Of a stretch of 64,000 nucleotides of DNA, positions 7,526 to 48,589 are shown one piece after another. The stretch lies in the IMG/VR virus record IMGVR_UViG_3300028840_008185, positions 186,001 to 250,000 of that record; one strand, given 5' to 3'. Each line of letters opens with the position of its first letter. Within the stretch, counting starts at the first letter, position 1. The position numbers and the translations under genes are program-made. The notes below the pieces were generated by a model. That model ran no database searches and was not told the DNA's origin. It saw nothing but the letters and a program-made list of their open reading frames with translations.

Positions 7526-7577
7526 TGGTGAACCTTTGTGGACTCGAACCACATACTTCCAAATACAAGTAAGGTTC
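7526..7577 (-). ncRNA. 52-nt minimal tRNA-like RNA lacking an anticodon arm
   Basis: Perfect 7-bp acceptor GAACCTT/AAGGTTC plus A-CCA; hairpin ACTT-GTATTTGG-AAGT; canonical T arm TGTGG-TTCGAGT-CCACA. Confidence 0.8.
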
Positions 7578-29835: not shown

Positions 29836-30108
29836 TTACTGTTCTCCTTCATCAAATTTCCCAGCACTTAAGTCTTCCAATGTTTTGTCAAATTCTTCAT
29901 CCTCAAAAGATAAACTCCTTGGTTTTACTTTCCCCCAGGGAGTTTCGTTTGAGATTAATCTCGACCAGACTTCTTTATCCACCGCCGCGAGCGTGGCATG
30001 TGCGCCTCTAACATGAACACTATCAATGTTGGTCACATTAGAATAAAACACCAAATACTGTCTCGCGAGCAATAGTTCTGTAAGCGTAAGTTTTCCTAAA
30101 TCTTTCAT
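29836..30108 (-). CDS. hypothetical protein (90 aa)
   Basis: TAATG overlap. Confidence 0.75.
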   Translation of the reverse strand: MKDLGKLTLTELLLARQYLVFYSNVTNIDSVHVRGAHATLAAVDKEVWSRLISNETPWGKVKPRSLSFEDEEFDKTLEDLSAGKFDEGEQ

Positions 30109-30947
30109 TAATTTCCTCCATCTATATCTCTTACATCATTGGACGGCAGGAGCCCGGTCGCCTCATTCAGGAAAAGAATTTGCGCGTTTCCTGCAAGCGT
30201 GATCTCCGTGACTCCACCGTTATTACTACTATCATTGGTGCAAACCAAAATTATCGACTTTTCTTCGTTGAACGCAACGGCAACAACCTGGGGCGCCGTG
30301 CCACCGATCACCTCGTTCGTAGCGCCGCTGCCAACGATGCCGTAGTCAATGGCCAGTCCGTAGCCGTCCAAGCCATCACTATATCCATCTACAGTTTGCG
30401 AATCGTATGTTTCTATTCTCGTCATGCCCAGGCTGGTTCCCACGAAAAGCCTAGCACCTCCACTGAGCCGCAGCGAAGCGGCATCAATTACCTCAAGACT
30501 GAGAATCTGTCCTGGGAAAAGAGCGGGGGTGGAGGTAGTGTTGTATATAAAATCAGGAGCCCTAGTGGTGTCTCCCCTGAAGTGAGCACCATAATATACT
30601 TCAACTCGGTTCAATGTCTCGTTTATTACATACAAGATCCCTTTATCACTTAGCCCCGGCTTGTTGCAGCTATAGCCATCCGCATACTGTTCAACACTCG
30701 CCGTGTCGTTCTTAATTACCACAGCACCATGCGAAGGGCCACCATAATCATCAAAGGAAGCTGCCAAGAAATCATCGGAGCCCACGGCATTGCCGGATAT
30801 ATGAGAGACACTATCGGACGGAATGGGCGGAACAGTAGTCGTATCCAGTATGGTCGAGACCACACTTTGACTCTCACCGACCAGATCGGCTAAATCTATC
30901 TTTTTAATTCCATATCCGTCTGAAAAATATAGTGCATTAACTGCCAT
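30108..30947 (-). CDS. probable virion structural beta-rich protein, 4 DGY
   Basis: Composition and context; propeller-like C-terminus. Confidence 0.7.
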   Translation of the reverse strand: MAVNALYFSDGYGIKKIDLADLVGESQSVVSTILDTTTVPPIPSDSVSHISGNAVGSDDFLAASFDDYGGPSHGAVVIKNDTASVEQYADGYSCNKPGLSDKGILYVINETLNRVEVYYGAHFRGDTTRAPDFIYNTTSTPALFPGQILSLEVIDAASLRLSGGARLFVGTSLGMTRIETYDSQTVDGYSDGLDGYGLAIDYGIVGSGATNEVIGGTAPQVVAVAFNEEKSIILVCTNDSSNNGGVTEITLAGNAQILFLNEATGLLPSNDVRDIDGGN

Positions 30948-30961
30948 TTGGTTTGTGCTCC

Positions 30962-33283
30962 TTATCTGCGAATCTTTACTCTTCTTATCAGCATAGAATC
31001 AGAAGTGTCTGGGGTCACGGGTGCGCCAGGAGATCTTCCGATAGTAATTCTATCGACGGCTCTCGGCACCGTTTCAGCTGTCCCAGTGCTTCCAGCAACG
31101 TCATCAACAAAAATCGCGTAGTTGTTGTCTTGGTAGTCAAACCTTAGTTTGTGCTCATATCCGTCCACTATATCAGCAGTTCCCGCCACCGGAACAACCA
31201 ATGGATAAATTCTGTCGATTACCACTGCCTCTCCCTTATCACCGACGGGATCCACATATACCTGAATTCTTTGAAACTTATCTTGACCATTACTTATGCC
31301 CATAATAGTTCTGTCGTAGGCCACCAAATCGTGCTCTGGAATCATACCGTAAGCCTCAATTACACCGTAGCCATCGTATATGTTGTCTGTCGCAAAATAT
31401 GACAAATTGTCAACTGCCTTGACAACTCCACTGATGCCATTTTCCGGAGTAAAGTTAGACGGGTAGCAAGTATCAGATTCAACTTGCGCCATCGCCACAT
31501 CAGTGGTATACATATTGGTTCCAGTATATAAAACCACTCCGTCTTGAGTAGCGGAATAGATTCTTATTTTGTCTGGAAACCAAGGAATCGTTTCCTCAAA
31601 AGGACCAGCCTTCCAAGAAAACCAGCATCTATACCAACCTTCCTTCCAGTCTTCGATTCCAGCTTCTTTCACATTAACAGCAGTTCCCTTTACACCACTC
31701 CCAACGTTGAAGTAGCAAGAGCGATAAATGCGATTAAGGCTGCTAAGCACCTCTAAGCGTATCCAGGCTCTATCTACAGCCTTGGCAAATACGGAAGCCA
31801 CATAGTATTCGGAATCTCTGGCATCAACAGCAATGTCGCTCTGGACGAAATGGATCCCATATGCAGAATTTTCTCTTAGCCTGTCAGCAGTCAGCATGTT
31901 GTCTGGAGCGTAAGTTGCGTTAGGAGAAACCGACATTCGTATGTTTGTCCAAGCATCAAAATTTTCTGGGTTGACAACTTGATTATAAAACCTTCTTTCA
32001 ACCAATAGCCCGTCTTCAGTTGCAACCCCGGAGCCGTTGTATCTGCGGCAGGTTCTAAACCAGTCTTCTCCTACACGGTAGTATTTCCTATATCCAGTTG
32101 ACTCCACTTTATCAAGATAAGCTACAGACGCCCTGGTGTGTAATTCTGGCGTGTAAGTTCCCGCAATTACTGGGTGTGTCTTGGTAATTTCCCTAAACCT
32201 TTGACCCTCGGTTGCAATTATCTCACCAGCGTTGGCGTCAGTGAACCAAGATGTTCTATTCCACAGGCAGACCAAAGCGACTTCAAAGCTGCCACCAGAA
32301 TTCCCAATCGCAAAGCGCTGGGAATTCGTCAAAGACCCAAGCCCAATGATCTCTGTTACTGTGCTGAACTTACCATCAACGAAAGCGTAAGCGTTCCCTC
32401 CCCTATCAACGTAGAAGGATATGTAATACCAAGTGTTTGGCTTCAACTCTCCAGTATAAATCGTGGTTGATCCAAGTGTTCCATACAAAGTAAGCGCTGC
32501 TGTTTGTGGAAAACTAGTGAATCTCAGTATCCAGCCGCCATCAGCATTTCCTTTGGACGCAATATTCCCAGGAGTTAGATAATCTGGAGTCTTAATCATG
32601 GCACTTAAAACAAAATCTTCAGATGTCATATCGCCGGTTACATTTCCCAAAGAATCCCAGAAATATATGCCGTTATTGAAAAGAACACTTTTGTCCGTAG
32701 TGCCAAGCAACGGGGTGTTCCTACCAGCCGTTACATCGGGGACGCTGCCAGCAGCTTCTAACGGCGCACCCCACCCCATATATGAATCCCATGTTGAGGT
32801 TGTTGCAACATCACCATTATAACAAAGTTCTGGGCTCTCATCCAAGGAATTTATTGTTAAGGTCATCTCGGCGTTAAAGATGTTGGTGTCCATATACTCA
32901 ACTAAAAATGTGATTTCGCCAGTTGAAAAAGTCCAACTATCATCCAGGGTATTTCCACCATAGTCATCAGCGACTACCCTAACTGTTATTTCTTCGTTTC
33001 CGTAAGGAACTGTCTTATCTACTACAATATGATACCCATCGTAACCGTCTACGATGGTAGGGGTAATCGCAGAAGAGGGGCCATTGAAGGGCGCTACGAA
33101 ACTGCCATTATATGCATCGGCTCCATCCACCCAAACTCTAAGAGTAGAGAGATCCACAAAGGTCTCGGCGTCCAGAACATCAACAGATATGAGCACACTT
33201 GTAGAAACTCTCGACGCTCCTGGCGCAGGGAACTCATTTCTTAAAAATGGCGGATTACCCGTATCAAAAAACCAGCTAGGCAT
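30962..33283 (-). CDS. probable virion fibre/spike protein: Ig-like, LamG/ConA-like and carbohydrate-binding-like domains
   Basis: N-terminal Ig-like repeat; W.....YVD......FVDG LamG pattern; NQVVNPENF...APDNMLTADRL. Confidence 0.75.
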   Translation of the reverse strand: MPSWFFDTGNPPFLRNEFPAPGASRVSTSVLISVDVLDAETFVDLSTLRVWVDGADAYNGSFVAPFNGPSSAITPTIVDGYDGYHIVVDKTVPYGNEEITVRVVADDYGGNTLDDSWTFSTGEITFLVEYMDTNIFNAEMTLTINSLDESPELCYNGDVATTSTWDSYMGWGAPLEAAGSVPDVTAGRNTPLLGTTDKSVLFNNGIYFWDSLGNVTGDMTSEDFVLSAMIKTPDYLTPGNIASKGNADGGWILRFTSFPQTAALTLYGTLGSTTIYTGELKPNTWYYISFYVDRGGNAYAFVDGKFSTVTEIIGLGSLTNSQRFAIGNSGGSFEVALVCLWNRTSWFTDANAGEIIATEGQRFREITKTHPVIAGTYTPELHTRASVAYLDKVESTGYRKYYRVGEDWFRTCRRYNGSGVATEDGLLVERRFYNQVVNPENFDAWTNIRMSVSPNATYAPDNMLTADRLRENSAYGIHFVQSDIAVDARDSEYYVASVFAKAVDRAWIRLEVLSSLNRIYRSCYFNVGSGVKGTAVNVKEAGIEDWKEGWYRCWFSWKAGPFEETIPWFPDKIRIYSATQDGVVLYTGTNMYTTDVAMAQVESDTCYPSNFTPENGISGVVKAVDNLSYFATDNIYDGYGVIEAYGMIPEHDLVAYDRTIMGISNGQDKFQRIQVYVDPVGDKGEAVVIDRIYPLVVPVAGTADIVDGYEHKLRFDYQDNNYAIFVDDVAGSTGTAETVPRAVDRITIGRSPGAPVTPDTSDSMLIRRVKIRR

Positions 33284-33299
33284 TTATAATTTTGCTCCG

Positions 33300-34073
33300 T
33301 TAGAGATTTTTCTCCCAACCTTTCTCGTCGTATCCAGCCTCCACAACCAGATCTGCAAAATCTGGGTCAGATTTTATAAGGCCCAATATTCGTGTTTTGT
33401 GATATTTCCACTGACCAACAGAATCTCTGTCAACTGGTCTTGGCCCCTTCAGCCAACGCATGGATCGATGACGCAGCTCTTTTTCAGTAAGAGTGTTGGG
33501 CCAATCATTGACATCTTCCATCCCCTTTTCTAAACCAATAGTCTCAAAAAGATTTTCCATAACCTCATTTGGTTGGGACACTAGCTCCTCATACTTTACT
33601 AGCAAGGTTCTATCGGGGTGTATTTCATAAAGTCTTTTGTAAATCGCTTCAGCATTTTTCCACATATACGGCAGACCCACATATCTGTTTGATTTTTGCA
33701 TCCTCGATGTCATGGAATCTCTGGGATCGCGGCGGATATGAATATGCCAAATTCTTTGCCAATTAGCCATCCACTCTACCCAAGGAATTATTTCTTCGCG
33801 ACCTTCAAAAATTGATTCACCAGACAGCACTCTCTCAGAGTTGATAAGGGCGGCATCAATTCCACTCATAGAGGCGCCCCATATATGAGGGGCGCCACAC
33901 CGCTTGCCAACAAAGGAAAGCTTGGGATCATCGTAGTATTGTTCTACGCGAAATAAAATAGGTGGTGGTATTTCCCCCATTATCACTTTAGTATCCTTGG
34001 CACAACGAAACAAGTTTTGTAACAAAGTTGTACCCGACCTGTTACAACCGAGAATAAAAATAAGTTCTCCCAT
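33300..34073 (-). CDS. PAPS-dependent sulfotransferase (Sulfotransfer_3/TPST-like)
   Basis: FILGCNRSGTTLL 5'-PSB loop; RRDPRDSMTS 3'-PB; VKYEELVSQP; PVDRDSVGQW; AAGGAG SD before ATG 34073. Confidence 0.88.
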   Translation of the reverse strand: MGELIFILGCNRSGTTLLQNLFRCAKDTKVIMGEIPPPILFRVEQYYDDPKLSFVGKRCGAPHIWGASMSGIDAALINSERVLSGESIFEGREEIIPWVEWMANWQRIWHIHIRRDPRDSMTSRMQKSNRYVGLPYMWKNAEAIYKRLYEIHPDRTLLVKYEELVSQPNEVMENLFETIGLEKGMEDVNDWPNTLTEKELRHRSMRWLKGPRPVDRDSVGQWKYHKTRILGLIKSDPDFADLVVEAGYDEKGWEKNL

Positions 34074-34084
34074 ACTTTTTCTCC

Positions 34085-35119
34085 TTATCGGGCAGTTATA
34101 TGAGTGCCCCACCCCAAACTGCTGGGCGGTGCTACTCCTAAATTTGTCCACGTTATAGTTTCTGCAGAAGAATTAACAACTCCTTCCCAAGTGTCCGCTC
34201 TCGGAATTGGGTGGAAAGGATCTCCATGCAGCCCTCCCACTATATATATTTTATTATTATCATCATCAACAACACAGTCCACGTATCCTCGCTGAGAAGG
34301 TGGACTATTTATATTGGTAAGTGTCCTGCGCGAATAGGATCCGGGGCTGGTTTCTACAATGGCATAAGTATCATTTAAAAATGTATAGGGTGAGATGTCA
34401 CCACCATATTCGCCCCAACCTGTTCTTCCTTCTACCTCAATGCCACCGAAATATATAAAAGCCCGCGAGCCTTCCCAATTAATCGTATTCGTCGCACAGG
34501 CATACTCCCAACTCTTGTCGGACCAAACATATGTTGTACTCCAGTCAGATGGATCAACCAGACATGCTATCATCATTGGCATGCCACCCCATCTAAAAAA
34601 AACCCAAAGTTTATCTCTAGAAGAATCCCATTCTAAATCTGGCCAATATCCTGATATAGGATATCCAAACCAAGTTCCTGGCGAGTGCGAACTCCATTGC
34701 CCAGATACACCATCCCACGTATAGATGGTGGCATCCTTCCAGAGTGCCATGGTTATCAAAATCATTTGATTATTAGTAGAGTCAAATGTCATAGCTGCCC
34801 AATGGCCTGGATATGTAGAATCTCCAGACCAGGAAGGCTGACTAGGTGCGTGCGTTACATTTGACCAAGTGTTGGTGTCCAAATCTAATTCCCATGTGCC
34901 CAATTCGTCGTAAAAACCACCATTCACATAAACTATTACATTTCTATTGGAATCATACGCAGCAACGCCATATGGATCAGAAAGCAGGTTTGGCCCTGCC
35001 ACTCCGGTTTCAATAGTATATAAATTAGTGCCAGAACTAAATTTAAACCAATCTTGATTTGGACTTTCTTCACCCTCATTTGTCCACTCAAGTGTGTACT
35101 CAGAACCATAGATCGTCAT
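34085..35119 (-). CDS. Kelch-like beta-propeller protein
   Basis: Repeated AYDS...VNGG, FDS, YFGG, IVGG...DTW blades. Confidence 0.75.
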   Translation of the reverse strand: MTIYGSEYTLEWTNEGEESPNQDWFKFSSGTNLYTIETGVAGPNLLSDPYGVAAYDSNRNVIVYVNGGFYDELGTWELDLDTNTWSNVTHAPSQPSWSGDSTYPGHWAAMTFDSTNNQMILITMALWKDATIYTWDGVSGQWSSHSPGTWFGYPISGYWPDLEWDSSRDKLWVFFRWGGMPMMIACLVDPSDWSTTYVWSDKSWEYACATNTINWEGSRAFIYFGGIEVEGRTGWGEYGGDISPYTFLNDTYAIVETSPGSYSRRTLTNINSPPSQRGYVDCVVDDDNNKIYIVGGLHGDPFHPIPRADTWEGVVNSSAETITWTNLGVAPPSSLGWGTHITAR

Positions 35120-35133
35120 ATAAAACTCCTATA

Positions 35134-37119
35134 TTAATAGCCTCTATCCACTTCACCACCATATGAAATAATCTTGGAAGAAACTGGGATCCAGACCATT
35201 CTATGTCCGCATATAGCAACGTTTGGATCCAATTCTGTTCGATGCCAAACTCTATACCATTCGCCAACTCCTCCATCCCATCTCCAACAATCTGCCAGCG
35301 GAAATTTATCACCGGTAATCTGCTCGCATCCGCCAAACATAATTACACCGCCAACTCCAGAATGGTAGGCCATGTCGGCATACTGCCTGGCTGGAGGAGA
35401 AGTTGACGGTGATTGTTGTGTAAAACCAGCTCCATTACCCGTCCAGGTGGTGCCATCTGTTCCAAACAAAACTATATTGCCAGCGGACTCGTCGTAGGCC
35501 ATTGAGGCAGACTCAAACGATGGCGATGAATTAACAAAACTCCAACTGGTGCCATCCCATGTATACACTCCACCTCCAGTTCCACTTCCATAACCAGTTG
35601 GACACACAATAACTGTTACCGAGCCATCAAAAGCCATGCAGAAATGCCACTGCCTCCCAGGATGTGTGCCTCCGAAACCAAAACCGCCTTTCCTGGTCCA
35701 TGTGGGCGGATTGGTCGAGGTATCAAGTTCAAAAATACGACCGTCATCGTCGTCGATAGTCGCTTGCGATCTTCCGCCATATAATACATGTACATTGCGC
35801 ACAGAATCATAAACCATACAATGGCCACCAGAAACGAATGATCTGGTTGGATCGGCATTCGCGTATGGAGGCCTGCTGCCTTGCGAAGTTTCATAAAGCC
35901 AGCCATATCCGTCCGTTGTATAAAACTCAAGAGAGTTGCCCCCAGATATCCACATATAAGCTTTTTGTTTTACAGGATCGTAAGATATCCCACGCATCTG
36001 TGAATAAAAATTTCCTGGAATGGAAGGCACATTCATGTCTTTGCGCCAGTTTATCTTTATGTCTGCTGCAGGGAATGGAGTAATTTCTCCAAACATTCCA
36101 AAAACTGTTACATAGTCCCACTTGGTAAAATTACGGTTTGTCCAACTTGTAAGCGGCGGTTGTGCTGATTGGATTATATTAGCCGTTTGGGAAAAGTGTT
36201 CACCAAAAGCCCACAAATTGTTAGCGCCGCTGCCCAATTGAAGAATTCCGCCGTCAAAAAGGTCTGGCCCTACCGATGGCGAAACAATGGTCCAAGCCGA
36301 TCCGTTCCAGTGTGCCATGCTTCCTGGTATTGGTGGAGAATATGAGCTAACAGCCCATAGATCATTAGAGCTGGTGCCGCCCAAGTGCATAATGCTTTCG
36401 AAACTGTCAATAACGGCATCGGATCTATCTACCCAGCCGGCCCCCGTCCATTGTTGTATGCTGGCTTGTGGACCGGATTCCAGATTACCACCAATCCAAA
36501 CATCATTAGGTCCGAACCCGAACACAGTATTGAGCCATTCATTGCCGCCCGGCGGAGATCCAGTAGGCGGCGTTCTATCAGTCCAAGCCGCTCCGTTGTA
36601 GTGATGTACAAAGCAACCAATTGCAGCATTCGTTTCACCTACAGCCCAAACATCATTGGGGCCGCTAGCCCAAATAGAGTAGACGGCGTAGATCTGAGGA
36701 TCAAGCGCTAGTATTGAGGCGCTTTCGTTAGTCCAAGTAGCTCCATTCCAATGCCACAATAAATAAGCTCCATACCCACTACCAACCCAAACATCATCCG
36801 AGGCTACAGCGAATACCGTGAAGAACCTAGTATTGGAAGGAATACCCCCGACTCCAGGATCCAGCTCTATATTGAAAGCACCGCCCTCCGAGGTTCTATG
36901 AAACAAACCTCGGTTCTGTGCAGCGATATACATATTAGAGGCCGACAGACCATGGAAACGACGATCCCCATGATTGATGAACCCCCAAACGGAACCGGTA
37001 CTCCATGTGTCAAAGAAATTCTCGAAATTCCAGGTGGCTCCATCATCATCTGATCTATATACCTGTGGAAGCCAACTAGTGCCAGATTTGGCTTCAATAT
37101 ATGCCCAAAGTGTAGCCAT
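35134..37119 (-). CDS. double beta-propeller protein (NDVW-type blades plus Kelch blades)
   Basis: Repeats SGPNDVWAVG, GPNDVWIGG, SSNDLWAV; HWNGxxWT; Kelch YDS...LYGG. Confidence 0.8.
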   Translation of the reverse strand: MATLWAYIEAKSGTSWLPQVYRSDDDGATWNFENFFDTWSTGSVWGFINHGDRRFHGLSASNMYIAAQNRGLFHRTSEGGAFNIELDPGVGGIPSNTRFFTVFAVASDDVWVGSGYGAYLLWHWNGATWTNESASILALDPQIYAVYSIWASGPNDVWAVGETNAAIGCFVHHYNGAAWTDRTPPTGSPPGGNEWLNTVFGFGPNDVWIGGNLESGPQASIQQWTGAGWVDRSDAVIDSFESIMHLGGTSSNDLWAVSSYSPPIPGSMAHWNGSAWTIVSPSVGPDLFDGGILQLGSGANNLWAFGEHFSQTANIIQSAQPPLTSWTNRNFTKWDYVTVFGMFGEITPFPAADIKINWRKDMNVPSIPGNFYSQMRGISYDPVKQKAYMWISGGNSLEFYTTDGYGWLYETSQGSRPPYANADPTRSFVSGGHCMVYDSVRNVHVLYGGRSQATIDDDDGRIFELDTSTNPPTWTRKGGFGFGGTHPGRQWHFCMAFDGSVTVIVCPTGYGSGTGGGVYTWDGTSWSFVNSSPSFESASMAYDESAGNIVLFGTDGTTWTGNGAGFTQQSPSTSPPARQYADMAYHSGVGGVIMFGGCEQITGDKFPLADCWRWDGGVGEWYRVWHRTELDPNVAICGHRMVWIPVSSKIISYGGEVDRGY

Positions 37120-37133
37120 TTTTTAATTCTCCT

Positions 37134-38546
37134 TTACTGATATGTTCCAAACAAACCAATACATATTCTTGGATTAGAAATTCCAATATTTCTATTTAAC
37201 CACGCGGTATCAGGGGGCCTATTAGACTGAACACATGTGCTTATGTCTCCAGAATCAGAACCAGCAAACCAAAGCTGCCTTGCAGTAAGATAGTTTGGCT
37301 CACCAAATAGAGTATAAATTTGATCTATACCACCAGAAATGGTTATATTCGTCCAACTAGAACCATCATAACGACTTACAATATTGCCGTTTGGTGATCC
37401 AATCCATACGTCATTAAAATTTTCTTCGCCAGTAATGCTTGTATACGAAGCCTGTGGCGATGATAATGTGGTTCCTAAATTGACAGGTGGCGCCCCGTAT
37501 CGCCATACTTGTGCCACGCCTCCAACAGTAGTACCAGTGGCAATCCATTCATATGGAGCCGCCCAAATGGCATGTCCATCTCCTCCATCATCAAAGCCGT
37601 AAACAGTCCATTGCCCAAACCCTGGCGTAAAAGTCTGGGACCAGACTCCAACAATTCCGCCGCCAGAATCAGAACCAGCAACACAAACATTATATCCGTC
37701 ACGATCCCAATTTATAGCCACCGAACTTAACTTGGTTATAGGAGTTCCATTTCTTGGCACCCCTCGCTGGTCTCCAGCCGGTATCCCCGCATTAAGATTT
37801 GCAGATATATCTGACCAACTAGCACCATAGTCTGGCGAAAACATAGAACAACACGTTCCAGCAAAAGTATGGCCAACTGCAGCTACGTATTGACCATAAG
37901 CATAGACAGAAAGAAACCTGGTGCCAGCAGGTACTCCACCAGCCCCAGGAACAATCACCTGTGTCCAATTAGTTCCATTCCACTTGTATACCCCCTTCTC
38001 TTGAGCAGCAGCAAACATATAATTTGAATTGTTTCCGTGTAAACGCCTAAAACCTTGACCGGCACGACTCTCAGCTATGCCAGCGGCAAGTGTTGAATGT
38101 AAACTCCAAGTAGCTCCATCATTAGATGATTCATAAATTTGAATATTGCTTCCAGTTTGTATTGTGTATGCATACAATTTAAAAGTGCCTGGGAATCCTC
38201 CAATACCTTCAAAGAGGAATGGCTCTGATGGAACTATATCTTCATTTATTATCCTGAACCTAATCTCTGTATCGCGGGGTCTATCTACAGTGCCGGCAGG
38301 AGGAAATAGATTATAAATAATATCTTGGTAGCCTTCTAACAAATCAACATCGACAGTGACTCTACCCAAATCAAGCTCTCCAGCTTTCCTGATAACAAAA
38401 TTATATCCATCATAACTATCAGCATTGCTGTAAATAACAAAGGATCCATTATTATAGGGAGACTGAAAAGTGTATCCGTCCCAAGCCTGATTGTAGCCAG
38501 TGCCATAACCCTCCTCAATATCCACGGTCGCAAAACGTGTAACCAT
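37134..38546 (-). CDS. beta-propeller protein paralogous to N-half of 35134..37119
   Basis: Shared DGATW, RR.HG, PG.GG.P..TRF, PP.T.W.NRN blocks. Confidence 0.8.
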   Translation of the reverse strand: MVTRFATVDIEEGYGTGYNQAWDGYTFQSPYNNGSFVIYSNADSYDGYNFVIRKAGELDLGRVTVDVDLLEGYQDIIYNLFPPAGTVDRPRDTEIRFRIINEDIVPSEPFLFEGIGGFPGTFKLYAYTIQTGSNIQIYESSNDGATWSLHSTLAAGIAESRAGQGFRRLHGNNSNYMFAAAQEKGVYKWNGTNWTQVIVPGAGGVPAGTRFLSVYAYGQYVAAVGHTFAGTCCSMFSPDYGASWSDISANLNAGIPAGDQRGVPRNGTPITKLSSVAINWDRDGYNVCVAGSDSGGGIVGVWSQTFTPGFGQWTVYGFDDGGDGHAIWAAPYEWIATGTTVGGVAQVWRYGAPPVNLGTTLSSPQASYTSITGEENFNDVWIGSPNGNIVSRYDGSSWTNITISGGIDQIYTLFGEPNYLTARQLWFAGSDSGDISTCVQSNRPPDTAWLNRNIGISNPRICIGLFGTYQ

Positions 38547-38606
38547 AAAAAATTTCCTCCAGTTTTTCCATTGTCATAATGTATGGCACAAATTCTTGGT
38601 AGACCA

Positions 38607-39905
38607 TTATACCCCTCCGAATCCGCCGAAGCCAAATGGCATAAAACCAAATGCTAAAGAAGCACTGACGCTAAAAGTATACATGGTATTCAACTCGTTT
38701 CCTAACAGGTCGCTAGCGACCACCCTTACAGAAACTGTTGAACCTAGCACAAGGGGACTAGGAGGCTCAATCACGAACGAAACCTGCTGATAACCAACCG
38801 CAGCAGTTCCTGAATATCCACTTTGCCATCCACCGAAGCCTCCAGCAAAAACGACTATGCCATCAACATAAACAGTAACCGAAGTAGGTTCCACAGAAGT
38901 GATGAGATCGGCAACCGTGAACGCTATGGAATCTGACGGGCTGGCTGTTCCGCCAGGCAGGGGCGACTGGCCTGTAAGATATGGTGGGTCTGTGTCCGTG
39001 ATTACCAAGTCGTTAGGGAAGTTGGCCACAAACATGGCATTTATTCCATAAGCATCAAGTATTTGTGCCCATCTTGCGGGAGTAGATACATTAACTCTTC
39101 TGAATACATCTATGCCCCTAGTGCCGCTTAGATATATTCTTTGGCTGTCGGAGGTAACCAATCTGCTCTCATGCCAACTTCTCACCCTGCCGTTATAATT
39201 GCTCATTGTGGCAGTTGAGTAGAATGGTGATAGTGTGGCAGTTCTAAAGGAAGCCGGTATGCCGTAGCCATCTGCGTCTCGTATGCTGTCTGATAATGTC
39301 AAGGTGAATGACGACTGCTCTTGGAAAAGCTCAACCCATAGCCTAACATTATCAGAATCTACAATATCTACCAACCTGCAATACATCCCTTTATCAAACT
39401 GGTAGCTCGTAGGACTGGTAAGCGCACTATCTATCGTCATCGGGCGCCCGAACTTAATATCAACCGTCACTTCATAAGGATCAACTGTTATTGAGGCGAT
39501 TCCAGTATAAATCTCAAATTCGTAATCGCCAGCCGGATCTACCAAGCCGTTTAGGGTATTACCATAATTGTCGCTCACAACAATAGCTACAACTTGCGTG
39601 CTGCTTTGGGGATAGAGACCGGTGTTGTCCAGCACCAAATGATATCCGTCATAACCATCTACAGTGGTCGGAGTGATGGAAGAGCCGGCGCCATTAAACG
39701 GGGCTATAAAAGTGCTGGGGCCACTAAAAGCCTGAATGCCGTTCACATAGGCGTCTAAGGTGGACAGATTAATAGCAGAGTAGTCATCCAACACGTCCAC
39801 GCTGGTCAGAGTGGCAGGATCTACGGTGCCTACAGGATCCGCATTCCTCAAGAATGGCCCAACATAATCTATGACGCCGAACGTCCAAGTTCCTATTGTT
39901 CCCAT
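38607..39905 (-). CDS. Ig-like repeat structural protein
   Basis: Two P.L....P...SVD/AF repeats; TVDGYDGYH. Confidence 0.75.
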   Translation of the reverse strand: MGTIGTWTFGVIDYVGPFLRNADPVGTVDPATLTSVDVLDDYSAINLSTLDAYVNGIQAFSGPSTFIAPFNGAGSSITPTTVDGYDGYHLVLDNTGLYPQSSTQVVAIVVSDNYGNTLNGLVDPAGDYEFEIYTGIASITVDPYEVTVDIKFGRPMTIDSALTSPTSYQFDKGMYCRLVDIVDSDNVRLWVELFQEQSSFTLTLSDSIRDADGYGIPASFRTATLSPFYSTATMSNYNGRVRSWHESRLVTSDSQRIYLSGTRGIDVFRRVNVSTPARWAQILDAYGINAMFVANFPNDLVITDTDPPYLTGQSPLPGGTASPSDSIAFTVADLITSVEPTSVTVYVDGIVVFAGGFGGWQSGYSGTAAVGYQQVSFVIEPPSPLVLGSTVSVRVVASDLLGNELNTMYTFSVSASLAFGFMPFGFGGFGGV

Positions 39906-39908
39906 TGA

Positions 39909-42900
39909 TTAATAACCATCCTTGTTAAGAGCGTCTATTCTTGTAGTTACTGAATCTCCAGAATGATAGGGCGCAGTTTTATCTATGATTAAATTGTAGG
40001 CATCGTAGCCGTCAACCACAGTTGGCGTGATGTCCGAAGACACGCCATTAAACGGAGCTATAAATGATCCATTGTAAGCCAATTGACCATCCACATAGGC
40101 ATTTATTGTGCTAAAATCTACACCTATTCCCTTGCTAAATATGTCAACACTCAACAGCGTGTTTGGATTGACGCCGCTCGCTCCATCGGGCGGAAACTCA
40201 TTGGCAATTTCTGGAGGGTCTGTATCTATCGTCAGAAAGCTATAATATGCGTCAAGGTAATTCCCAGCAAAATCATACGCATCTACTTCAACCACAACAT
40301 AAGAATACGTGGAAAAATCAGCATCAGGGTTTATCACATATCTATATCCATCCGCTATAGCGAAAGTACCAACAGAAAATCCAGGCTGCGCCATCTCCAT
40401 CTCCCAAGCCGTGTGTCCGTCAATGGCTAATATAACAGAGTAAGCGTCGAGTCCGCTATCATCATCTGTAATATCCAGAGATATATTGGTTTCTATTATC
40501 ACGCCTGTTTGATCCGGCGCTGGATTTTGGTTCGATAAAACTGGAGAGGTTACATCAGCGTCACCTATTTTCGAGATGCCCACCCAAGTTTGGGTAGTGG
40601 GAAGCCAGTTAGTTCCAGTAATCCCCTCAAGCCAGCCAAGACCACTTGCTGCGATGTCATCCCACAATCTATTATTGCTCTCAGCCGACACCGCCATTAC
40701 GGCACTATCATTGAAAGCGCTAATCCCTGTGGGCGTAAGAGTGTCGCCCAGCTTTTGTTGTAGCGACCAGGAGCCAGTAACCAGCTCGTATACGCTGGCA
40801 TCGGATGCAAGGTCATCTGCCGTAAACACCCACCAGTCCCCAGAGCCATCTCTAAACAAAGATCGATCTCCAGCAGCTTCGCTAATATCAGGTGCAGCGA
40901 CACTCCATGACCCGCCCTCAAACTTGGAGAACAGCATCGTGCCACCGAGACCCTGGAGCGCGACCCACGCGCCTTCATTGGTGGTTATCACATCCTTGGC
41001 CAGATTCGCAGGCCCCGTCAGTGCCCCCAGGTATACATTCTGGGAACCGCCGGTCCAGCTACTATCCCTAACGATCTCTGACCAGCTCGCACCGTCGGCG
41101 GTGCGCCGGACAATAAACTCAAAAGTGCCCGACTCGGAGTAGGCCACGTAGCCTACCTCGTCGTTGAACATCCAGATGTCACCACCGAATAGATTGAAGG
41201 GCACTGCGTCCTGCCGCGTGACCGTGGCTCCATCGAAAAATTGCGCCCCAGCCGCTCCGCCATATCCCGAGCTATACCACTGCTTGTTCGCCGCCGTTGC
41301 CGAACTCCTCGCAGGACCGGCGTATGGCCATTCGAATGGGCCAATGTATGACCACGAGACGCCATCCCATTTGCACAAACGCCCACCTGATACAGAGGTG
41401 GCATAGTACAACCAGACGTAGATTTCATTAGCAGATATAGCGTGAATCGCACCCACGTATGATCCGGTAACAACTGTTGGAGCAACATCGGCCACCAGTT
41501 GAGCCCACTGATTGGTCCAGACTCCAGCCCCCCGTGGACTGTTGTCACGGAAGCCGATATACTGGTTTCCGCCCACCACCACATCTTCGATGTTGGGTCC
41601 ATAGACGTAGACATCAAAGAGAAGATTGCCAACTGGAGCAAGGGTGGCATCCGTTACCCAGGTTGAGCCATTCCATTGTTTCAGTACCGGGTCGCTGTTC
41701 CAGGACAGCGCATAGACGTTGTTGTAATCGTAGCCATGAATTCGATCCGCCTTGTTGCCGCCAGTAAAGTTACACGGCCCCTTGTCTACCCAAACCCCAC
41801 CTTCAAGATGCAGGAACTTTTGCGTGGTTCCCGCTGCCTGCCTGGCACCCATAATCAGACGGCTATTGGCATCGCCCCAGATCCCGGCCACGGCGTCATA
41901 GGTGCCCGTGTTAATCTGCGGACTGAACTCAACCAAGTTGAGGCTGCCGTCGAGTGTGTATAGCTTGTCTGTGCCAACGACACTTAGCGATATGACAAGC
42001 TGCTTCGATGACCCATGCAACGCTGCCGCTGCTGCGAAGCGATTAACCCACGAAGTGCCGCCATCGTCGCTGTGCCACAGCTGACTGTTGCTGCTAGTGA
42101 TCCAAATGTCCTGTCCATCTCTACTGGCGCTAATGTTGAGTTCATAACCACCAGTGCTGCCAGGAATCAGTGAGGCTGTCCAAGCAGAGCCGTTCCAGCG
42201 GAAATAATAGATGTTGGTGCCATCTTCACCAACGCCATGGATTCTTTCCGCTACATAATCTGTCCCATACAAACGCTCAATTCTTGCTGGGTTGCTTAAT
42301 TTGTGGGCTGTCCACGAGTCGCTGGTAGGATCATAGTGCCAAGCTATATCTGCTGGAGAACCTCCGGTTCCACCAGAAGAAATGCTGAGAACTACCTCAC
42401 CGCTACTAAAACCTTGAATGTCACTATAGTTGGTCGCAAGTACGGTAAGGTCGTCAGGATCGGCTTTATCTTGACCTCTGCTGGAATTGTCAGCCCATCT
42501 ACACCACGCGGCATACTTAGAGTCACCCTTTGTCCAAAGAGTGTAGTCTGCCACCTTGGTCCCGTATGTGGTCACGATTCTTCTATTTGGATCAGATATT
42601 GGAGCAATAAACCCCTGAGCAGCATAGCCTCCAGAAACAAGATTATTCCAAGTGCTTCCGCCATCTATGGAGATGCGAGAAGTATTAGAGCCGCTTGCCC
42701 ATAGGGTCTGGCTGTCAACGGCAGCAGGTTGGGCAGTCGTTCCCGCCACGCCTGTTGGACCCAAGTTGGTCCAACTATCTGGTCCATTGCGAATCCAGAA
42801 ATCCTGGCCAACAGCATAACATAAGAAAGAGTCGTCTGCGCTGACAGCAAAACAAGGTCGGGTGTCTCCGACAGTGGCCACAGAAAATGGGCCATCAGTC

Positions 42901-44816
42901 GTGTTGTCTTTCACAAAACCACCACTCCAGGTCCCGCGCCAGATGTCCCCATTACCATCGATCAGAAAGGCTTCGCCATCAAACTCGATGATGTTATACA
43001 TGGATACGCTGGTAGGTAAATCCCCGCCAGAATAAACTTCAAAGCCTCCGCCAGTGGTCCAACGCCGAAGCCGTACTGCTCCTGCTCCGGTATTCCATGT
43101 AACAGCGAACAAGCACTCATCAGCACTAATAGCTAGTGGCCAGTCTCGCCCGCCGCGATTAGTCTGTCCCTGTAGAACATCAAACGTAGCACCATTCCAT
43201 CTATAAATATAAGTGTTGGGAGAGCCAATGGCATCTCCACACATGAATACATAGTCTGCCCCTGGAACCTTCGAAATGGCGCAATAGCCCCGATTATTCG
43301 AAGGTGTGGCGTCATAGGTTGTCCATGAATACCCATCCCAGTGGATCATAGAGAACCGGTCGCTGCCCGAGTTGGTCAGCATACCGATCCAAATGTCATC
43401 CATGCTGCTGTTGCGATAATCGAAATTGTGTACCCCGCCAAACGTAAAGCCGGGCGGTACAACAGGGAAGCGTCCTAGACCGCTACCTTCTTCCCAGTGC
43501 CAAAGCTCGTTGTTGGCTGCGGGAGTGAGGTAGCCTATAAAGTGGGCTCCGTCAGAAACTGGAGTGGAAGTGAACGAGCAATACCCGTCTACAAAATTTC
43601 CAGATAAATCCTCAGCATATACTCCCACCGTGAGATACGCATCTGGCCAAGTGCTATCAGCAGGAGGAAGCATCACATATCTGTAGCCATCCCAGTTCCC
43701 ACTACTTATAGCCGTTCTTGAGCCACGATAGCCATCAGTAGGTGCATCATTCTGCCAAATTACATATCCATCCAATGCAACGATGGTGGCAGATCCATCA
43801 ATGTTGCCATATTCATCAAGAACATCAAAAGCTATGCGAACTGTGTCAGGCTGTGTGCTACCATCGGCTGGATATTCTCTAAGTATCTGTGGTGCGTAAG
43901 CATCCGCCGACGTGTCAAAGCTCCACGATCCGTCAAGATGGAGCCCATCAAAATCATCAACTGTAATTCTTGGCGTTATTGTGCTTCCCCACGGAAGCAC
44001 TGTTGTTCTGTCTAAAACAATGTGATATCCGTCGTAGCCATCAACAGTAGTTGGGGTTATGGATGACAGAGGGCCGTCATACGGGGAAACAAATCCCAAG
44101 CCAACCCTGTAAGCATCGGCGCCGCTAACATAAGCATCAAGAGTAGAGAGATCGATGCCAGAGTATTCGTCTATAACATCGACCGAGATGAGCGTTCCTA
44201 TATCAACATTGGAAGCACCTGACGCAGGGAATCTGTTTCTGAGTTCTGGTACAAAATAATCTATAACGCGAAAGCTGTAAGTTGTATCTAGCGCATCAAC
44301 ATAACCATCATGAGCAACAACCCTTACGGAAATAGTGGTAAAGTAATCCCAGTCTGAGGTCTTCTGGATTGCGAAATGATGACCTAGGTCAACAAGCGTG
44401 CGGGAAGAACTCCCACCATTATAGGGTGCAGCAAATGTATCTGTCGATCCCTGATATGCCAAGACTCCTTCAACCTCAATAGACACCGTAGCTAAGTCTA
44501 TATTGTTGTTTATGTCCAGCAAATCAAATTCGACAACCTTATCAATCGCAACACCTGTGGCGTTTGGAAGGGGATCTTGATTGTCTAGATAAGGCGCGGT
44601 GCGATCAAGCCACCAGCCGAAAACCTCATCACGCGCTTCAGTTCTTGGGTCGGAGTAGCCATCAAAACCGAACAAAACTGTACTACCACCCGCCCAATCT
44701 CCCGGTTGATAATTCCGGGGATCGGCATAGCCATCAAAGCCAGATTGTACAGTATTGCCACTAGCCCAGCCGCCTGGGCTAAAGTTTCGAGGGCTGGCAT
44801 ATCCGTCCCAAACCAT
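39909..44816 (-). CDS. 1635-aa fibre/adhesin-like protein: 3 N-terminal DGY repeats, 5 Ig-like domains, central propellers
   Basis: Repeats read directly; at least 14 DGY; ends in DGY-stop. Confidence 0.8.
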   Translation of the reverse strand: MVWDGYASPRNFSPGGWASGNTVQSGFDGYADPRNYQPGDWAGGSTVLFGFDGYSDPRTEARDEVFGWWLDRTAPYLDNQDPLPNATGVAIDKVVEFDLLDINNNIDLATVSIEVEGVLAYQGSTDTFAAPYNGGSSSRTLVDLGHHFAIQKTSDWDYFTTISVRVVAHDGYVDALDTTYSFRVIDYFVPELRNRFPASGASNVDIGTLISVDVIDEYSGIDLSTLDAYVSGADAYRVGLGFVSPYDGPLSSITPTTVDGYDGYHIVLDRTTVLPWGSTITPRITVDDFDGLHLDGSWSFDTSADAYAPQILREYPADGSTQPDTVRIAFDVLDEYGNIDGSATIVALDGYVIWQNDAPTDGYRGSRTAISSGNWDGYRYVMLPPADSTWPDAYLTVGVYAEDLSGNFVDGYCSFTSTPVSDGAHFIGYLTPAANNELWHWEEGSGLGRFPVVPPGFTFGGVHNFDYRNSSMDDIWIGMLTNSGSDRFSMIHWDGYSWTTYDATPSNNRGYCAISKVPGADYVFMCGDAIGSPNTYIYRWNGATFDVLQGQTNRGGRDWPLAISADECLFAVTWNTGAGAVRLRRWTTGGGFEVYSGGDLPTSVSMYNIIEFDGEAFLIDGNGDIWRGTWSGGFVKDNTTDGPFSVATVGDTRPCFAVSADDSFLCYAVGQDFWIRNGPDSWTNLGPTGVAGTTAQPAAVDSQTLWASGSNTSRISIDGGSTWNNLVSGGYAAQGFIAPISDPNRRIVTTYGTKVADYTLWTKGDSKYAAWCRWADNSSRGQDKADPDDLTVLATNYSDIQGFSSGEVVLSISSGGTGGSPADIAWHYDPTSDSWTAHKLSNPARIERLYGTDYVAERIHGVGEDGTNIYYFRWNGSAWTASLIPGSTGGYELNISASRDGQDIWITSSNSQLWHSDDGGTSWVNRFAAAAALHGSSKQLVISLSVVGTDKLYTLDGSLNLVEFSPQINTGTYDAVAGIWGDANSRLIMGARQAAGTTQKFLHLEGGVWVDKGPCNFTGGNKADRIHGYDYNNVYALSWNSDPVLKQWNGSTWVTDATLAPVGNLLFDVYVYGPNIEDVVVGGNQYIGFRDNSPRGAGVWTNQWAQLVADVAPTVVTGSYVGAIHAISANEIYVWLYYATSVSGGRLCKWDGVSWSYIGPFEWPYAGPARSSATAANKQWYSSGYGGAAGAQFFDGATVTRQDAVPFNLFGGDIWMFNDEVGYVAYSESGTFEFIVRRTADGASWSEIVRDSSWTGGSQNVYLGALTGPANLAKDVITTNEGAWVALQGLGGTMLFSKFEGGSWSVAAPDISEAAGDRSLFRDGSGDWWVFTADDLASDASVYELVTGSWSLQQKLGDTLTPTGISAFNDSAVMAVSAESNNRLWDDIAASGLGWLEGITGTNWLPTTQTWVGISKIGDADVTSPVLSNQNPAPDQTGVIIETNISLDITDDDSGLDAYSVILAIDGHTAWEMEMAQPGFSVGTFAIADGYRYVINPDADFSTYSYVVVEVDAYDFAGNYLDAYYSFLTIDTDPPEIANEFPPDGASGVNPNTLLSVDIFSKGIGVDFSTINAYVDGQLAYNGSFIAPFNGVSSDITPTVVDGYDAYNLIIDKTAPYHSGDSVTTRIDALNKDGY

Positions 44817-44829
44817 TTATTGCTCCTCC

Positions 44830-46047: not shown

Positions 46048-46059
46048 TATTAGCCTCCT

Positions 46060-47268: not shown

Positions 47269-47304
47269 CAGTTTTGCTCCTTTGGGGACAAATAGTCGGT
47301 CATA

Positions 47305-47349
47305 TCAATCCCCAGGTTGATAATTCCGTGAATCGGCATCCCAAGCCAT
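47305..47349 (-). pseudogene. 14-codon relic of the 5' end of the 1635-aa gene (MAWDADSRNYQPGD*)
   Basis: Matches MVWDGY...DPRNYQPGDW of 39909..44816; same TAAATG start context. Confidence 0.75.
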
Positions 47350-47352
47350 TTA

Positions 47353-48576: not shown

Positions 48577-48589
48577 TACCAACCTCCTT

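What the first reader, a model, noticed from the sequence alone, without database searches (positions are those of the whole stretch)
33300..34073. Sulfotransferase embedded among DGY-rich virion genes: possible phage tyrosine sulfation of fibres
Seen: the only enzyme gene inside the 30-49.8 kb structural block has PAPS-binding motifs (GCNRSGTTLL, RRDPRD.MTS, YEELVSQP). Established: tyrosylprotein sulfotransferases and Xanthomonas RaxST share this fold and prefer Tyr in acidic contexts, but the family also acts on glycans and small molecules. Inference: the enzyme may sulfate DGY tyrosines, or a fibre-attached glycan, to tune receptor binding or evade host recognition. I am not aware of this being described for phage particles.
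Basis: inference. Interest (0 to 1): 0.75.

Follow-up and report, generated by a model that had tools for sequence, protein, structure and literature searches.

The report
Megaphage sulfotransferase paired with Kelch propeller

Summary
Window 33300-34073 (-) encodes a 257-aa PAPS-type sulfotransferase (Pfam Sulfotransfer_3, 7.9e-16). It has a strong ribosome-binding site, a confident AlphaFold model, and the quoted motifs.

New context:
- The gene always follows a ~340-aa Kelch-type beta-propeller gene, in 8 of 8 independent loci.
- The same phage record (318 kb; about 452.6 kb on a metagenome contig) encodes an APS kinase, which makes PAPS.
- It also encodes a second sulfotransferase inside a 14-kb glycan-synthesis cluster.

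DGY enrichment is real: 76 observed against 5.4 expected in the fibre-like proteins, specific to Asp and Tyr, and selected at the protein level.

The tyrosine-sulfation reading gains some support. TPSTs are the closest solved relatives by sequence profile (1.4e-17), and Arg/Glu/Lys align with the TPST catalytic residues.

It also loses support:
- A polyketide sulfotransferase fits the fold equally well.
- The stretch carrying TPST2's peptide-binding arginines (own knowledge) is much shorter here.
- DGY sites lack acidic neighbours.
- The invariant DGY motif models as a tight beta-hairpin inside a folded Ig-like domain.

Best reading: a phage-supplied sulfation cassette that decorates a phage-made macromolecule. 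Estimated odds are glycan about 0.35, DGY tyrosine about 0.15, host-directed about 0.25. No acceptor could be tested here.

The parts
33300..34073 (-). Sulfotransferase ST1, 257 aa. 5'-phosphosulfate loop at residues 9-18, proposed catalytic base E34, K57, 3'-phosphate motif R115-S123. Variable low-confidence insert at residues 65-93.
34081..34086 (-). Ribosome-binding site AAGGAG, 7 nt before the ATG at 34073. It overlaps the stop codon of the upstream Kelch-like gene, which suggests translational coupling.
34085..35119 (-). Kelch-type beta-propeller protein, 344 aa. It is the fixed upstream partner of ST1 in all 8 independent loci.
30962..33283 (-). 773-aa tail-fibre-like protein directly downstream of ST1. 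It has an N-terminal Ig-like domain with the invariant DGYDGY hairpin, a Laminin_G_3-like region, and a central part resembling tail-fibre and baseplate proteins.
30108..30947 (-). 279-aa DGY-rich protein (4 DGY). It is homologous to the C-terminal part of the 768-aa protein next to ST1 in relative L005.
35134..44816 (-). Four large beta-rich proteins (661, 470, 432 and 1635 aa) with Ig-like (Big_5), BNR/Ycf48-like and propeller-like repeats. Three of them carry 20 of the DGY motifs; the 661-aa one has fewer than two.
44830..49801 (-). Four ORFs of 402-433 aa with no family match, at the PhoH end of the block. The two compared (405 and 433 aa) are 74% identical and carry 2 DGY each.

Best explanation
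Shown: ST1 is a real, conserved sulfotransferase gene with its catalytic residues intact. It belongs to a roughly 450-kb tailed phage from sediment and seawater. It forms a fixed two-gene cassette with a Kelch-type beta-propeller gene, inside a variable block of large beta-rich, fibre-like genes between PhoH and the MetAP/Tmk/endolysin/ThyX genes. The same phage record encodes an APS kinase, and a second, unrelated sulfotransferase inside a 14-kb cluster with GDP-mannose dehydratase, a GDP-fucose-synthase-like epimerase, five glycosyltransferases and three methyltransferases. Inferred: the phage converts host APS into PAPS with its own kinase. ST1 then transfers the sulfo group from PAPS to a hydroxyl of a phage-made macromolecule associated with the fibre-like proteins. 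E34 would act as the base, R12 and K57 would stabilise the leaving phosphosulfate, and R115 and S123 would hold the 3'-phosphate. The Kelch propeller would act as the acceptor-binding partner. I commit to a sugar or glycoconjugate hydroxyl as the most likely acceptor, for example a glycan built by the phage's own cluster and carried on those proteins. Direct tyrosine sulfation is second among particle-directed options.
For: Family and fold. Catalytic residues conserved over 11 clade members at 36-65% identity: G33, E34, R58 and R115-D119 are invariant; K57 in 10/11; R or K at position 12 in 9/11; S123 in 9/11. Cassette with the Kelch gene in 8/8 loci, while the genes on the other side vary; the partners are homologous. 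Stop-codon/RBS overlap. APS kinase at 4.1e-63 in the same record. Second sulfotransferase and glycan cluster directly upstream of the second DGY-rich block. Distant cellular homologues of ST1 are fused to GT2 plus methyltransferase, to a rhamnosyl-O-methyltransferase-like domain, or to GH43. Weak NoeE (Nod-factor fucose sulfotransferase) signals. Kelch propellers include sugar-handling proteins, and a distant partner homologue is annotated as sialic-acid mutarotase. From my own knowledge, most characterised bacterial sulfotransferases of this superfamily act on glycans or glycolipids. Virion glycosylation has precedent in mycobacteriophages (Freeman et al. 2023, cited in PMC12619734).
Against: No acceptor was tested. 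ST1 lies 34 kb from the glycan cluster, which has its own sulfotransferase. The best sequence-profile matches among solved structures are protein-tyrosine sulfotransferases, not carbohydrate sulfotransferases. The first non-phage homologue is in a polyketide cluster. The virion role of the neighbours rests mostly on one tail-protein match. No ATP sulfurylase, CysD or PAP phosphatase was found in the 318-kb record, so the PAPS supply depends on host APS. No glycosylation of these proteins has been shown. The complex prediction for ST1 with the Kelch protein gave no answer.
Confidence: 0.35

Rival explanations
1. One reading: ST1 is a TPST-like enzyme that O-sulfates the tyrosine of the hydrophobic-D-[G/A]-Y motif in the fibre-like proteins. 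It would have to act on unfolded chains before they fold, perhaps with the Kelch propeller as the motif-binding adaptor.
For: TPST1 and TPST2 are the top solved matches by profile (1.4e-17 with the wide alignment, 4.4e-8 with the phage clade alone) and by Foldseek. R12, E34 and K57 align with the TPST2 catalytic residues R78, E99 and K158. DGY is 14-fold enriched, while DGF, DGW, NGY and EGY are not, and selection is at the protein level. Unrelated fibre proteins of phages without this enzyme show no enrichment. Neighbours of ST1 in relatives L004, L005, L006 and L018 are also DGY-rich. Some motifs sit at chain termini or in low-complexity runs such as DGYDGYDGY. The glycan cluster has its own sulfotransferase, which leaves ST1 free for another acceptor.
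Against: The olefin-synthase sulfotransferase fits the fold equally well. The TPST segment between the catalytic Glu and Lys is cut from 58 to 22 residues; it carries the peptide-binding arginines (own knowledge). TPST2 Ser285 (own knowledge) aligns with an invariant Gly. There is no acidic context around the sites, and position -3 is hydrophobic. The invariant DGYDGY models as a tight hairpin in a well-folded Ig-like domain. The ST1-Kelch cassette persists next to proteins with 0-1 DGY in L001, L008 and L019, although those contigs are short.
Confidence: 0.15
2. ST1 is host-directed. It would sulfate a host envelope polysaccharide, lipid or small metabolite, for example to mask the receptor against superinfection or as an auxiliary metabolic gene. 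Its place among fibre-like genes would then be incidental.
For: Sulfotransferases of PF13469 are already listed as viral auxiliary genes with unknown role (PMC10580990; PMC8290583). Several virus-only sulfotransferase clusters exist in the ESM Atlas and BFVD. The block lies between metabolic genes: PhoH and RNR on one side, MetAP, Tmk and ThyX on the other. In relative L001 the cassette sits only three small genes from PhoH.
Against: The strict pairing with a Kelch propeller and the position next to tail-fibre-like genes are kept across relatives at 36-65% identity. ST1 is not close to the known viral sulfotransferases (no tblastn match in 50,697 phage records; TM at most 0.48). No signal peptide or membrane segment was examined.
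Confidence: 0.25
3. The acceptor is the Kelch-like partner itself, or another protein side chain outside the DGY motif.
For: The partner is the only gene that always accompanies ST1 (8/8 loci), and the two genes are translationally coupled.
Against: No tyrosine is invariant in the partner alignment. There is no predicted interface (no verdict, so not evidence either way). There is no precedent.
Confidence: 0.1
4. ST1 is a catalytically dead, structural or regulatory remnant.
For: The loop Arg at position 12 is Gly in two of eleven clade members.
Against: All other PAPS-binding and catalytic positions are invariant or nearly so across the clade. The model is confident. The phage keeps an APS kinase.
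Confidence: 0.03

Closest known systems
Tyrosylprotein sulfotransferases (human TPST1/TPST2, tick TPST; bacterial counterpart RaxST of Xanthomonas)
   Same: Same Pfam family (PF13469). They are the best solved relatives by sequence profile (1.4e-17 over nearly the full length) and by Foldseek (TM 0.6). The Arg-type 5'-phosphosulfate loop, the Glu base about 21-22 residues after it, a Lys, and the RDxR...S 3'-phosphate motif are shared.
   Different: Only 15-21% identity. The helical segment between the Glu and the Lys, which carries the peptide-binding arginines in TPST2 (own knowledge), is 22 residues here against 58, and ST1 has its own variable insert at residues 65-93. ST1 is cytoplasmic, with no membrane anchor. 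The proposed sites are not acidic and appear structured. RaxST itself did not appear among the structure or sequence matches, so it could not be compared directly.
CurM / olefin-synthase 'activating' sulfotransferase domains of polyketide synthases (4gbm, 4gox)
   Same: Top structural match by VIA-align (Z 16.7, rmsd 3.0 over 207 residues) and second-best by profile (3.5e-12). The first non-phage homologue of ST1 lies in a polyketide cluster.
   Different: ST1 is a stand-alone gene. No ACP, thioesterase or PKS gene is seen next to it in the window or in the seven relatives' loci.
Phage and giant-virus sulfotransferases annotated as auxiliary genes (Synechococcus phages S-SCSM1 and S-SRM01, OM43-phage genomes, Mimiviridae)
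   Same: Virus-encoded PF13469/PF00685 enzymes of unknown role.
   Different: Structurally more distant from ST1 than the TPSTs are (TM at most 0.48), with no tblastn match. None of those reports describes pairing with a Kelch gene, a position among fibre-like genes, or co-occurrence with an APS kinase.
Virion glycosylation systems of mycobacteriophages
   Same: Phage-encoded enzymes that decorate the phage's own structural proteins after translation. This phage also carries many glycosyltransferases.
   Different: No sulfation has been described there. Glycosylation of this phage's proteins is only inferred.

Membership tests
PAPS-dependent sulfotransferase superfamily (Pfam Sulfotransfer_3, PF13469) | Profile score above the curated cut-off | tested here: met
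   59.4 bits against a cut-off of 27, E 7.9e-16
PAPS-dependent sulfotransferase superfamily (Pfam Sulfotransfer_3, PF13469) | 5'-phosphosulfate-binding strand-loop-helix (GxxRSGTT) and 3'-phosphate-binding motif (RDxR...S) | tested here: met
   Residues 9-18 and 115-123. Conserved across 11 clade members, except R12 replaced by G in two.
PAPS-dependent sulfotransferase superfamily (Pfam Sulfotransfer_3, PF13469) | Alpha/beta sulfotransferase fold | tested here: met
   Model pLDDT 86.9. 74 Foldseek PDB matches at E <= 0.001, and all 50 listed are sulfotransferases. VIA-align Z 15-17 for the best.
PAPS-dependent sulfotransferase superfamily (Pfam Sulfotransfer_3, PF13469) | PAPS-dependent sulfo-transfer activity | not testable with these tools
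   Needs a recombinant enzyme assay.
Tyrosylprotein sulfotransferase (TPST / RaxST type) | Catalytic Arg, Glu and Lys (TPST2 R78, E99, K158) | tested here: met
   R12, E34 and K57 align in the profile-to-TPST1 alignment. E34 is invariant, K57 is kept in 10/11, and position 12 is R or K in 9/11. Residue roles are taken from PMC10951654.
Tyrosylprotein sulfotransferase (TPST / RaxST type) | Closer to TPSTs than to other sulfotransferase classes | tested here: inconclusive
   By sequence profile TPST1 scores 1.4e-17 against 3.5e-12 for the CurM sulfotransferase. By structure the olefin-synthase sulfotransferase scores Z 16.7 against 15.7 for TPST1. The nearest cellular homologue lies in a polyketide cluster.
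Tyrosylprotein sulfotransferase (TPST / RaxST type) | Peptide-binding segment between the catalytic Glu and Lys (with Arg101, Arg105 and Arg122 in TPST2, from my own knowledge) and Ser285 | tested here: not met
   22 residues here against 58 in TPST2, shown as a 40-residue gap in the alignment. The aligned positions are P36 and L40. Ser285 aligns with the invariant G220.
Tyrosylprotein sulfotransferase (TPST / RaxST type) | Acceptor tyrosines in acidic, unfolded segments | tested here: not met
   Acidic residues within +/-5 of the site average 0.92 at D[GA]Y against 1.17 at other Tyr. Position -3 is hydrophobic in 66% of sites. The invariant DGYDGY lies in a modelled beta-hairpin of a folded domain. 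This tests the proposed substrate, not the enzyme.
Tyrosylprotein sulfotransferase (TPST / RaxST type) | Tyrosine O-sulfation activity | not testable with these tools
   Needs a peptide assay or mass spectrometry.
Polyketide 'activating' sulfotransferase (CurM / OLS type) | Domain embedded in, or adjacent to, a PKS module with ACP and thioesterase | tested here: not met
   ST1 is a stand-alone 257-aa gene. No PKS, ACP or thioesterase genes next to it in the window or the relatives' loci.
Nod-factor / carbohydrate sulfotransferases (NoeE, NodH type) | NCBIfam equivalog score | tested here: not met
   NoeE scores 23.8 bits against a cut-off of 500. Foldseek TM 0.49.

The most novel reading that the evidence does not exclude
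A lineage of marine megaphages makes its own PAPS and uses a TPST-related enzyme, guided by a Kelch-propeller adaptor, to O-sulfate tyrosines in a four-residue sequon (hydrophobic-Asp-Gly/Ala-Tyr). That sequon has been multiplied 14-fold in their fibre proteins, which would give the particle a sulfated, polyanionic surface. It would be the first sequon-directed tyrosine sulfation outside eukaryotes and Xanthomonas, and the first on a virus particle made by viral enzymes.
Probability: 0.13. Interest if true: 0.85.

Novelty: new variant of a known kind. Interest (0 to 1): 0.5.

Why it matters
Sulfotransferase genes are listed in many viral metagenomes, and one paper states that their biological function in phage genomes remains unclear (PMC10580990). 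This locus gives a concrete, testable setting. It combines a fixed enzyme-plus-propeller cassette among fibre-like genes, a phage-encoded APS kinase, a second sulfotransferase in a large glycan cluster, and a very strong Tyr-specific motif in the neighbouring proteins. If the particle or its fibres carry sulfate esters on sugars or on tyrosines, this would be a new kind of phage surface chemistry. It would bear on adsorption to polysaccharide-rich hosts and sediments, and on how phage proteins are recognised. If the enzyme instead acts on the host, it would be a new form of phage-driven envelope modification. Whatever the enzyme does, the DGY motif is an unexplained and unusually strong sequence signal.

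Tried and rejected
- **Complex prediction of ST1 with the Kelch partner:** no verdict (score 0.00). I do not use it as evidence either way.
- **Search for relatives:** megablast and tblastn against 50,697 phage records found nothing for the block, for ST1 or for the 432-aa protein. IMG/VR scans with the ST1 and partner alignments found no relatives. The scan with ST1 returned only the same phage on two contigs plus one distant fragment.
- **Rest of the sulfate pathway:** no ATP sulfurylase above cut-off, and no CysD/CysH or CysQ in the 318-kb record. The full 452.6-kb contig could not be searched.
- **Defence-system role:** no PADLOC match for ST1, the partner or ST2.
- **DNA-level explanation of DGY:** rejected. 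Synonymous codons follow background usage, and the motif is confined to the coding strand.
- **DGY as a general feature of fibre proteins:** rejected. A 2963-aa cyanophage baseplate protein has 1 DGY (0.86 expected) and the RcapMu fibres have 0.
- **DGY as copies of a single repeated domain:** only partly true. About 7 of the 76 lie in the DGYD[GA]Y Ig-like domain.
- **ST1 and ST2 as recent paralogues:** rejected; no significant similarity.
- **Expression data:** no RNA run was listed.
- **Canonical sheath, capsid and terminase families:** not found in the record.
- **Other genetic code:** no evidence; all genes read cleanly in table 11.
Full report
**1. The observation.** The finding's coordinates hold a minus-strand ORF of 257 codons, 33300-34073.
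- A longer GTG-initiated reading from 34151 would overlap the upstream gene.
- The ATG at 34073 has AAGGAG 7 nt upstream, and that site overlaps the upstream gene's TAA. Every homologue starts at the same Met.
- Pfam places the protein in Sulfotransfer_3 (7.9e-16, 59.4 bits against a cut-off of 27) and Sulfotransfer_1 (5.1e-10).
- An AlphaFold2 model built on 58 homologues has mean pLDDT 86.9. Its single low-confidence stretch is residues 65-93.
- Two public runs from different studies (sediment 2018, seawater 2021) each carry 30900-36800 in one contig with no differences, at word depth of about 180. The gene order is therefore not an assembly artefact.

**2. What the window is.**
- All large genes lie on the minus strand.
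- Flanking genes on one side: PhoH (49927-51204), class I ribonucleotide reductase, a sigma factor, DnaB and DnaC-like proteins.
- Flanking genes on the other side: methionine aminopeptidase, thymidylate kinase, an amidase endolysin, ThyX and a flavoprotein.
- The window is bases 186001-250000 of a 318,373-bp IMG/VR virus record. The same sequence occurs at 100% identity on a 452,599-bp metagenome contig. This is a tailed phage of roughly 450 kb.
- It has no DNA or protein-level relatives for this block in 50,697 deposited phage genomes.

**3. The neighbours.** Between 30.1 and 49.8 kb there are 12 other large ORFs, and none has an enzyme domain.
- The 773-aa gene directly downstream of the sulfotransferase matches PHROG 5939 'tail protein' (1.3e-19). 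Its central part resembles tail-fibre proteins of Rhodobacter and Rhizobium phages and a cyanophage baseplate wedge subunit.
- The others show only weak Ig-like (Big_5), Kelch and BNR/Ycf48-like signals.
- Canonical sheath, HK97 capsid and terminase families were not found anywhere in the 318-kb record.
- 'Fibre-like' is therefore a reasonable label. 'Virion genes' is not demonstrated.

**4. The DGY signal is real and sharply defined.**
- Genome-wide there are 83 DGY against 14.6 expected. They are concentrated in 15 large proteins in two blocks, window 30-49 kb and record 268-318 kb.
- In the 33 proteins of those blocks, DGY occurs 76 times against 5.4 expected (14-fold, Poisson 1e-58). It is the most enriched tripeptide, followed by WDG (5.6-fold) and DAY (23 against 4.4, 5.2-fold).
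- DGF (1.7x), DGW (0.5x), NGY (0.7x) and EGY (0.85x) are not enriched. In the rest of the proteome DGY is 0.68x.
- Synonymous codons are used as in the background, and the nucleotide pattern is confined to the coding strand. The selection therefore acts on the protein.
- A 2963-aa cyanophage baseplate protein and three RcapMu tail proteins show no enrichment.
- Position -3 is hydrophobic in 66% of sites, against 32% for other tyrosines. Apart from the Asp at -2 there are no extra acidic residues within five positions (0.92 against 1.17).
- About 7 of the 76 motifs belong to a repeated ~125-residue domain in which D-G-Y-D-x-Y is invariant across ten copies at 39-53% identity.
- A model of that domain (pLDDT 90.8) is an Ig-like sandwich. 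Residues 72-78 form a strand, D79-G80 form a two-residue turn, and Y81 starts the next strand.
- At least in this domain, DGY is a tight beta-hairpin element of a folded protein. Why Asp and Tyr are so specifically required remains unexplained.

**5. Relatives and the conserved cassette.**
- Searches of 5.8 billion and 1.84 billion proteins found only about a dozen close relatives of the enzyme, at 36-66% identity, all from metagenomes.
- I recovered seven further independent loci: L001, L004, L005-7, L008/9, L018, L019 and L028.
- In every locus where the upstream DNA is present (8 of 8 including the window), the sulfotransferase gene is directly preceded by a 337-374-aa gene.
- These upstream proteins are homologous to one another. 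They are Kelch-type beta-propellers by Pfam and by ESM Atlas features and structure.
- The gene on the other side varies: a fibre-like protein, small radical-SAM enzymes, a radical-SAM/SPASM pair, or unknown proteins.
- L005 and L018 keep the window's order down to MetAP, Tmk, amidase and ThyX. In L001 the cassette lies only three small genes from PhoH.
- The large fibre-like genes around the cassette therefore expand and contract, while the cassette is fixed.
- Neighbours are DGY-rich in L004, L005, L006 and L018, but not in the short contigs L001, L008 and L019.

**6. The rest of the genome.**
- The record encodes an APS kinase (PF01583, 4.1e-63; a 182-aa ORF with an intact P-loop) at record position 52352-52798.
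- No ATP sulfurylase above cut-off, CysD/CysH or CysQ was found.
- A second sulfotransferase (262 aa, Sulfotransfer_3/_4, not similar to ST1) lies at record 258409-259197.
- It sits inside a 14-kb cluster holding GDP-mannose 4,6-dehydratase, a GDP-fucose-synthase-like epimerase, another epimerase, three GT2 and two GT1/GT4 glycosyltransferases, three methyltransferases and a radical-SAM/SPASM enzyme.
- That cluster ends about 300 bp before the second DGY-rich block begins.
- The phage thus has the means to make PAPS from APS and to build a fucose-type, methylated, sulfated glycan.

**7. What kind of sulfotransferase ST1 is.**
- *By sequence profile.* The family is closest to protein-tyrosine sulfotransferases among solved structures. 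TPST1 scores 1.4e-17 over nearly the full length with the wide alignment and 4.4e-8 with the phage clade alone. The CurM polyketide sulfotransferase scores 3.5e-12 and 4.9e-6.
- *By structure.* Foldseek ranks the TPSTs first (E about 2e-7, TM 0.6). The independent structural aligner instead ranks the olefin-synthase polyketide sulfotransferase first (Z 16.7), then TPST1, TPST2 and tick TPST (15.7-15.1), followed by a gap to 12.1.
- *Catalytic residues.* In the profile alignment R12, E34 and K57 fall on TPST2 R78, E99 and K158, the residues shown by mutagenesis to be needed for catalysis (PMC10951654). R115 and S123 fall on the 3'-phosphate motif. Across 11 clade members E34 and R115-D119 are invariant, K57 is kept in 10, position 12 is R or K in 9, and S123 is kept in 9. 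The enzyme is very probably active.
- *Differences from TPST.* The segment between the Glu and the Lys is 22 residues here against 58. In TPST2 it carries the peptide-binding arginines (my own knowledge). TPST2 Ser285 aligns with an invariant Gly. ST1 has its own variable insert at 65-93.
- *Cellular homologues.* The nearest one (5e-18) lies in a polyketide synthase cluster. More distant ones are fused to TPR repeats, to GT2 plus methyltransferase, to a rhamnosyl-O-methyltransferase-like domain or to GH43.
- *Viral sulfotransferases.* Virus-encoded sulfotransferases are known, but they are structurally further from ST1 than the TPSTs are.
- Homology therefore fixes the chemistry, which is PAPS-dependent O-sulfation with a Glu base. 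It does not fix the acceptor.

**8. Weighing the acceptors.**
- *For tyrosine.* The TPST affinity, the Tyr-specific motif, and a separate sulfotransferase already serving the glycan cluster.
- *Against tyrosine.* The equal fit to a non-protein sulfotransferase, the shortened TPST peptide-binding segment, the non-acidic and hydrophobic context of the sites, the folded hairpin model, and the cassette's persistence next to proteins with few or no DGY motifs.
- *For a glycan or glycoconjugate.* The phage's large glycan machinery and its own PAPS supply, the glycan-enzyme fusions among cellular homologues, sugar-handling members of the Kelch fold, and (from my own knowledge) the predominance of glycan and glycolipid acceptors among characterised bacterial sulfotransferases.
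- *For a host-directed role.* Only the general view of such genes as auxiliary genes, plus the metabolic genes flanking the block.
- *Odds.* About 0.35 for a phage-associated glycan, 0.15 for DGY tyrosine, 0.25 for a host-directed role, 0.10 for another protein acceptor and 0.03 for an inactive protein. The remainder is unassigned.

**9. Novelty and verdict.**
- The enzyme class and its presence in phages are known.
- New here are the fixed pairing with a Kelch propeller among fibre-like genes, the co-occurrence with a phage APS kinase and a second sulfotransferase in a glycan cluster, and the exceptionally strong hydrophobic-D-[G/A]-Y motif in the neighbouring proteins.
- I found no paper describing sulfated phage particles or phage tyrosine sulfation.

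Noticed in passing
window 1-7600: An island of about 25 tightly packed small minus-strand ORFs (50-165 aa) at 54-56% GC, against about 45% in the rest of the window. Ten tested ORFs have no Pfam family. No tRNA, Rfam family or tandem repeat.
   Followed up: partly
window 15177-19691 (-): A 1504-aa fusion protein combining a SET domain, a eukaryotic-type topoisomerase IB core, a CCA-adding/poly(A) polymerase head with its RNA-binding domain, and an HD domain.
   Followed up: no
outside the window: record G000 253.4-267.7 kb (L015:3483-17691): A 14-kb glycan cluster: GDP-mannose 4,6-dehydratase, a GDP-fucose-synthase-like epimerase, three GT2, two GT1/GT4 (one with a 'GT4 in conflict systems' domain), three methyltransferases, a second sulfotransferase, and a radical-SAM/SPASM enzyme with a weak viperin-like PADLOC match.
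   Followed up: partly
outside the window: record G000 52352-52798 (L010:1441-1989): A phage-encoded APS kinase, next to an ankyrin-like 136-aa ORF (by eye, no family scan) and an apparent adenylosuccinate synthetase (by eye, no family scan). No ATP sulfurylase, CysD/H or CysQ in the 318-kb record.
   Followed up: partly
outside the window: L015:1932-3386 and 398-1951: A tubulin/FtsZ-family protein (possibly PhuZ-like) and a UvsW-type helicase just beyond the window's end.
   Followed up: no
window 30108-48654 and record 268-318 kb: The motif hydrophobic-Asp-Gly/Ala-Tyr is 14-fold over-represented in large beta-rich proteins. It is specific for Asp and Tyr and selected at the protein level. 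In one repeated Ig-like domain it is an invariant hairpin. Its purpose is unexplained.
   Followed up: yes
window 39909-44816 (-), residues 1-70 and the C-terminus: The 1635-aa protein starts with three tandem ~24-residue repeats, each containing F/W-DGY-x-D/S-PR, and it ends with ...KDGY directly before the stop codon.
   Followed up: no
window 44830-49801 (-): Four ORFs of 402-433 aa with no family match. The two compared (405 and 433 aa) are 74% identical, which suggests recent tandem duplication.
   Followed up: partly
L001:1661-5251 and L004:435-4406: In relatives, the ribonucleotide reductase carries an intein with a LAGLIDADG domain, and a 1323-aa DGY-rich Laminin_G-like protein carries a Hint/intein domain.
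   Followed up: no
whole record: IMG/VR classes the 318-kb record as a 'provirus' at 79% completeness, yet the same sequence lies on a 452.6-kb contig. No Pfam sheath, HK97 capsid or large terminase was detected in the record.
   Followed up: partly
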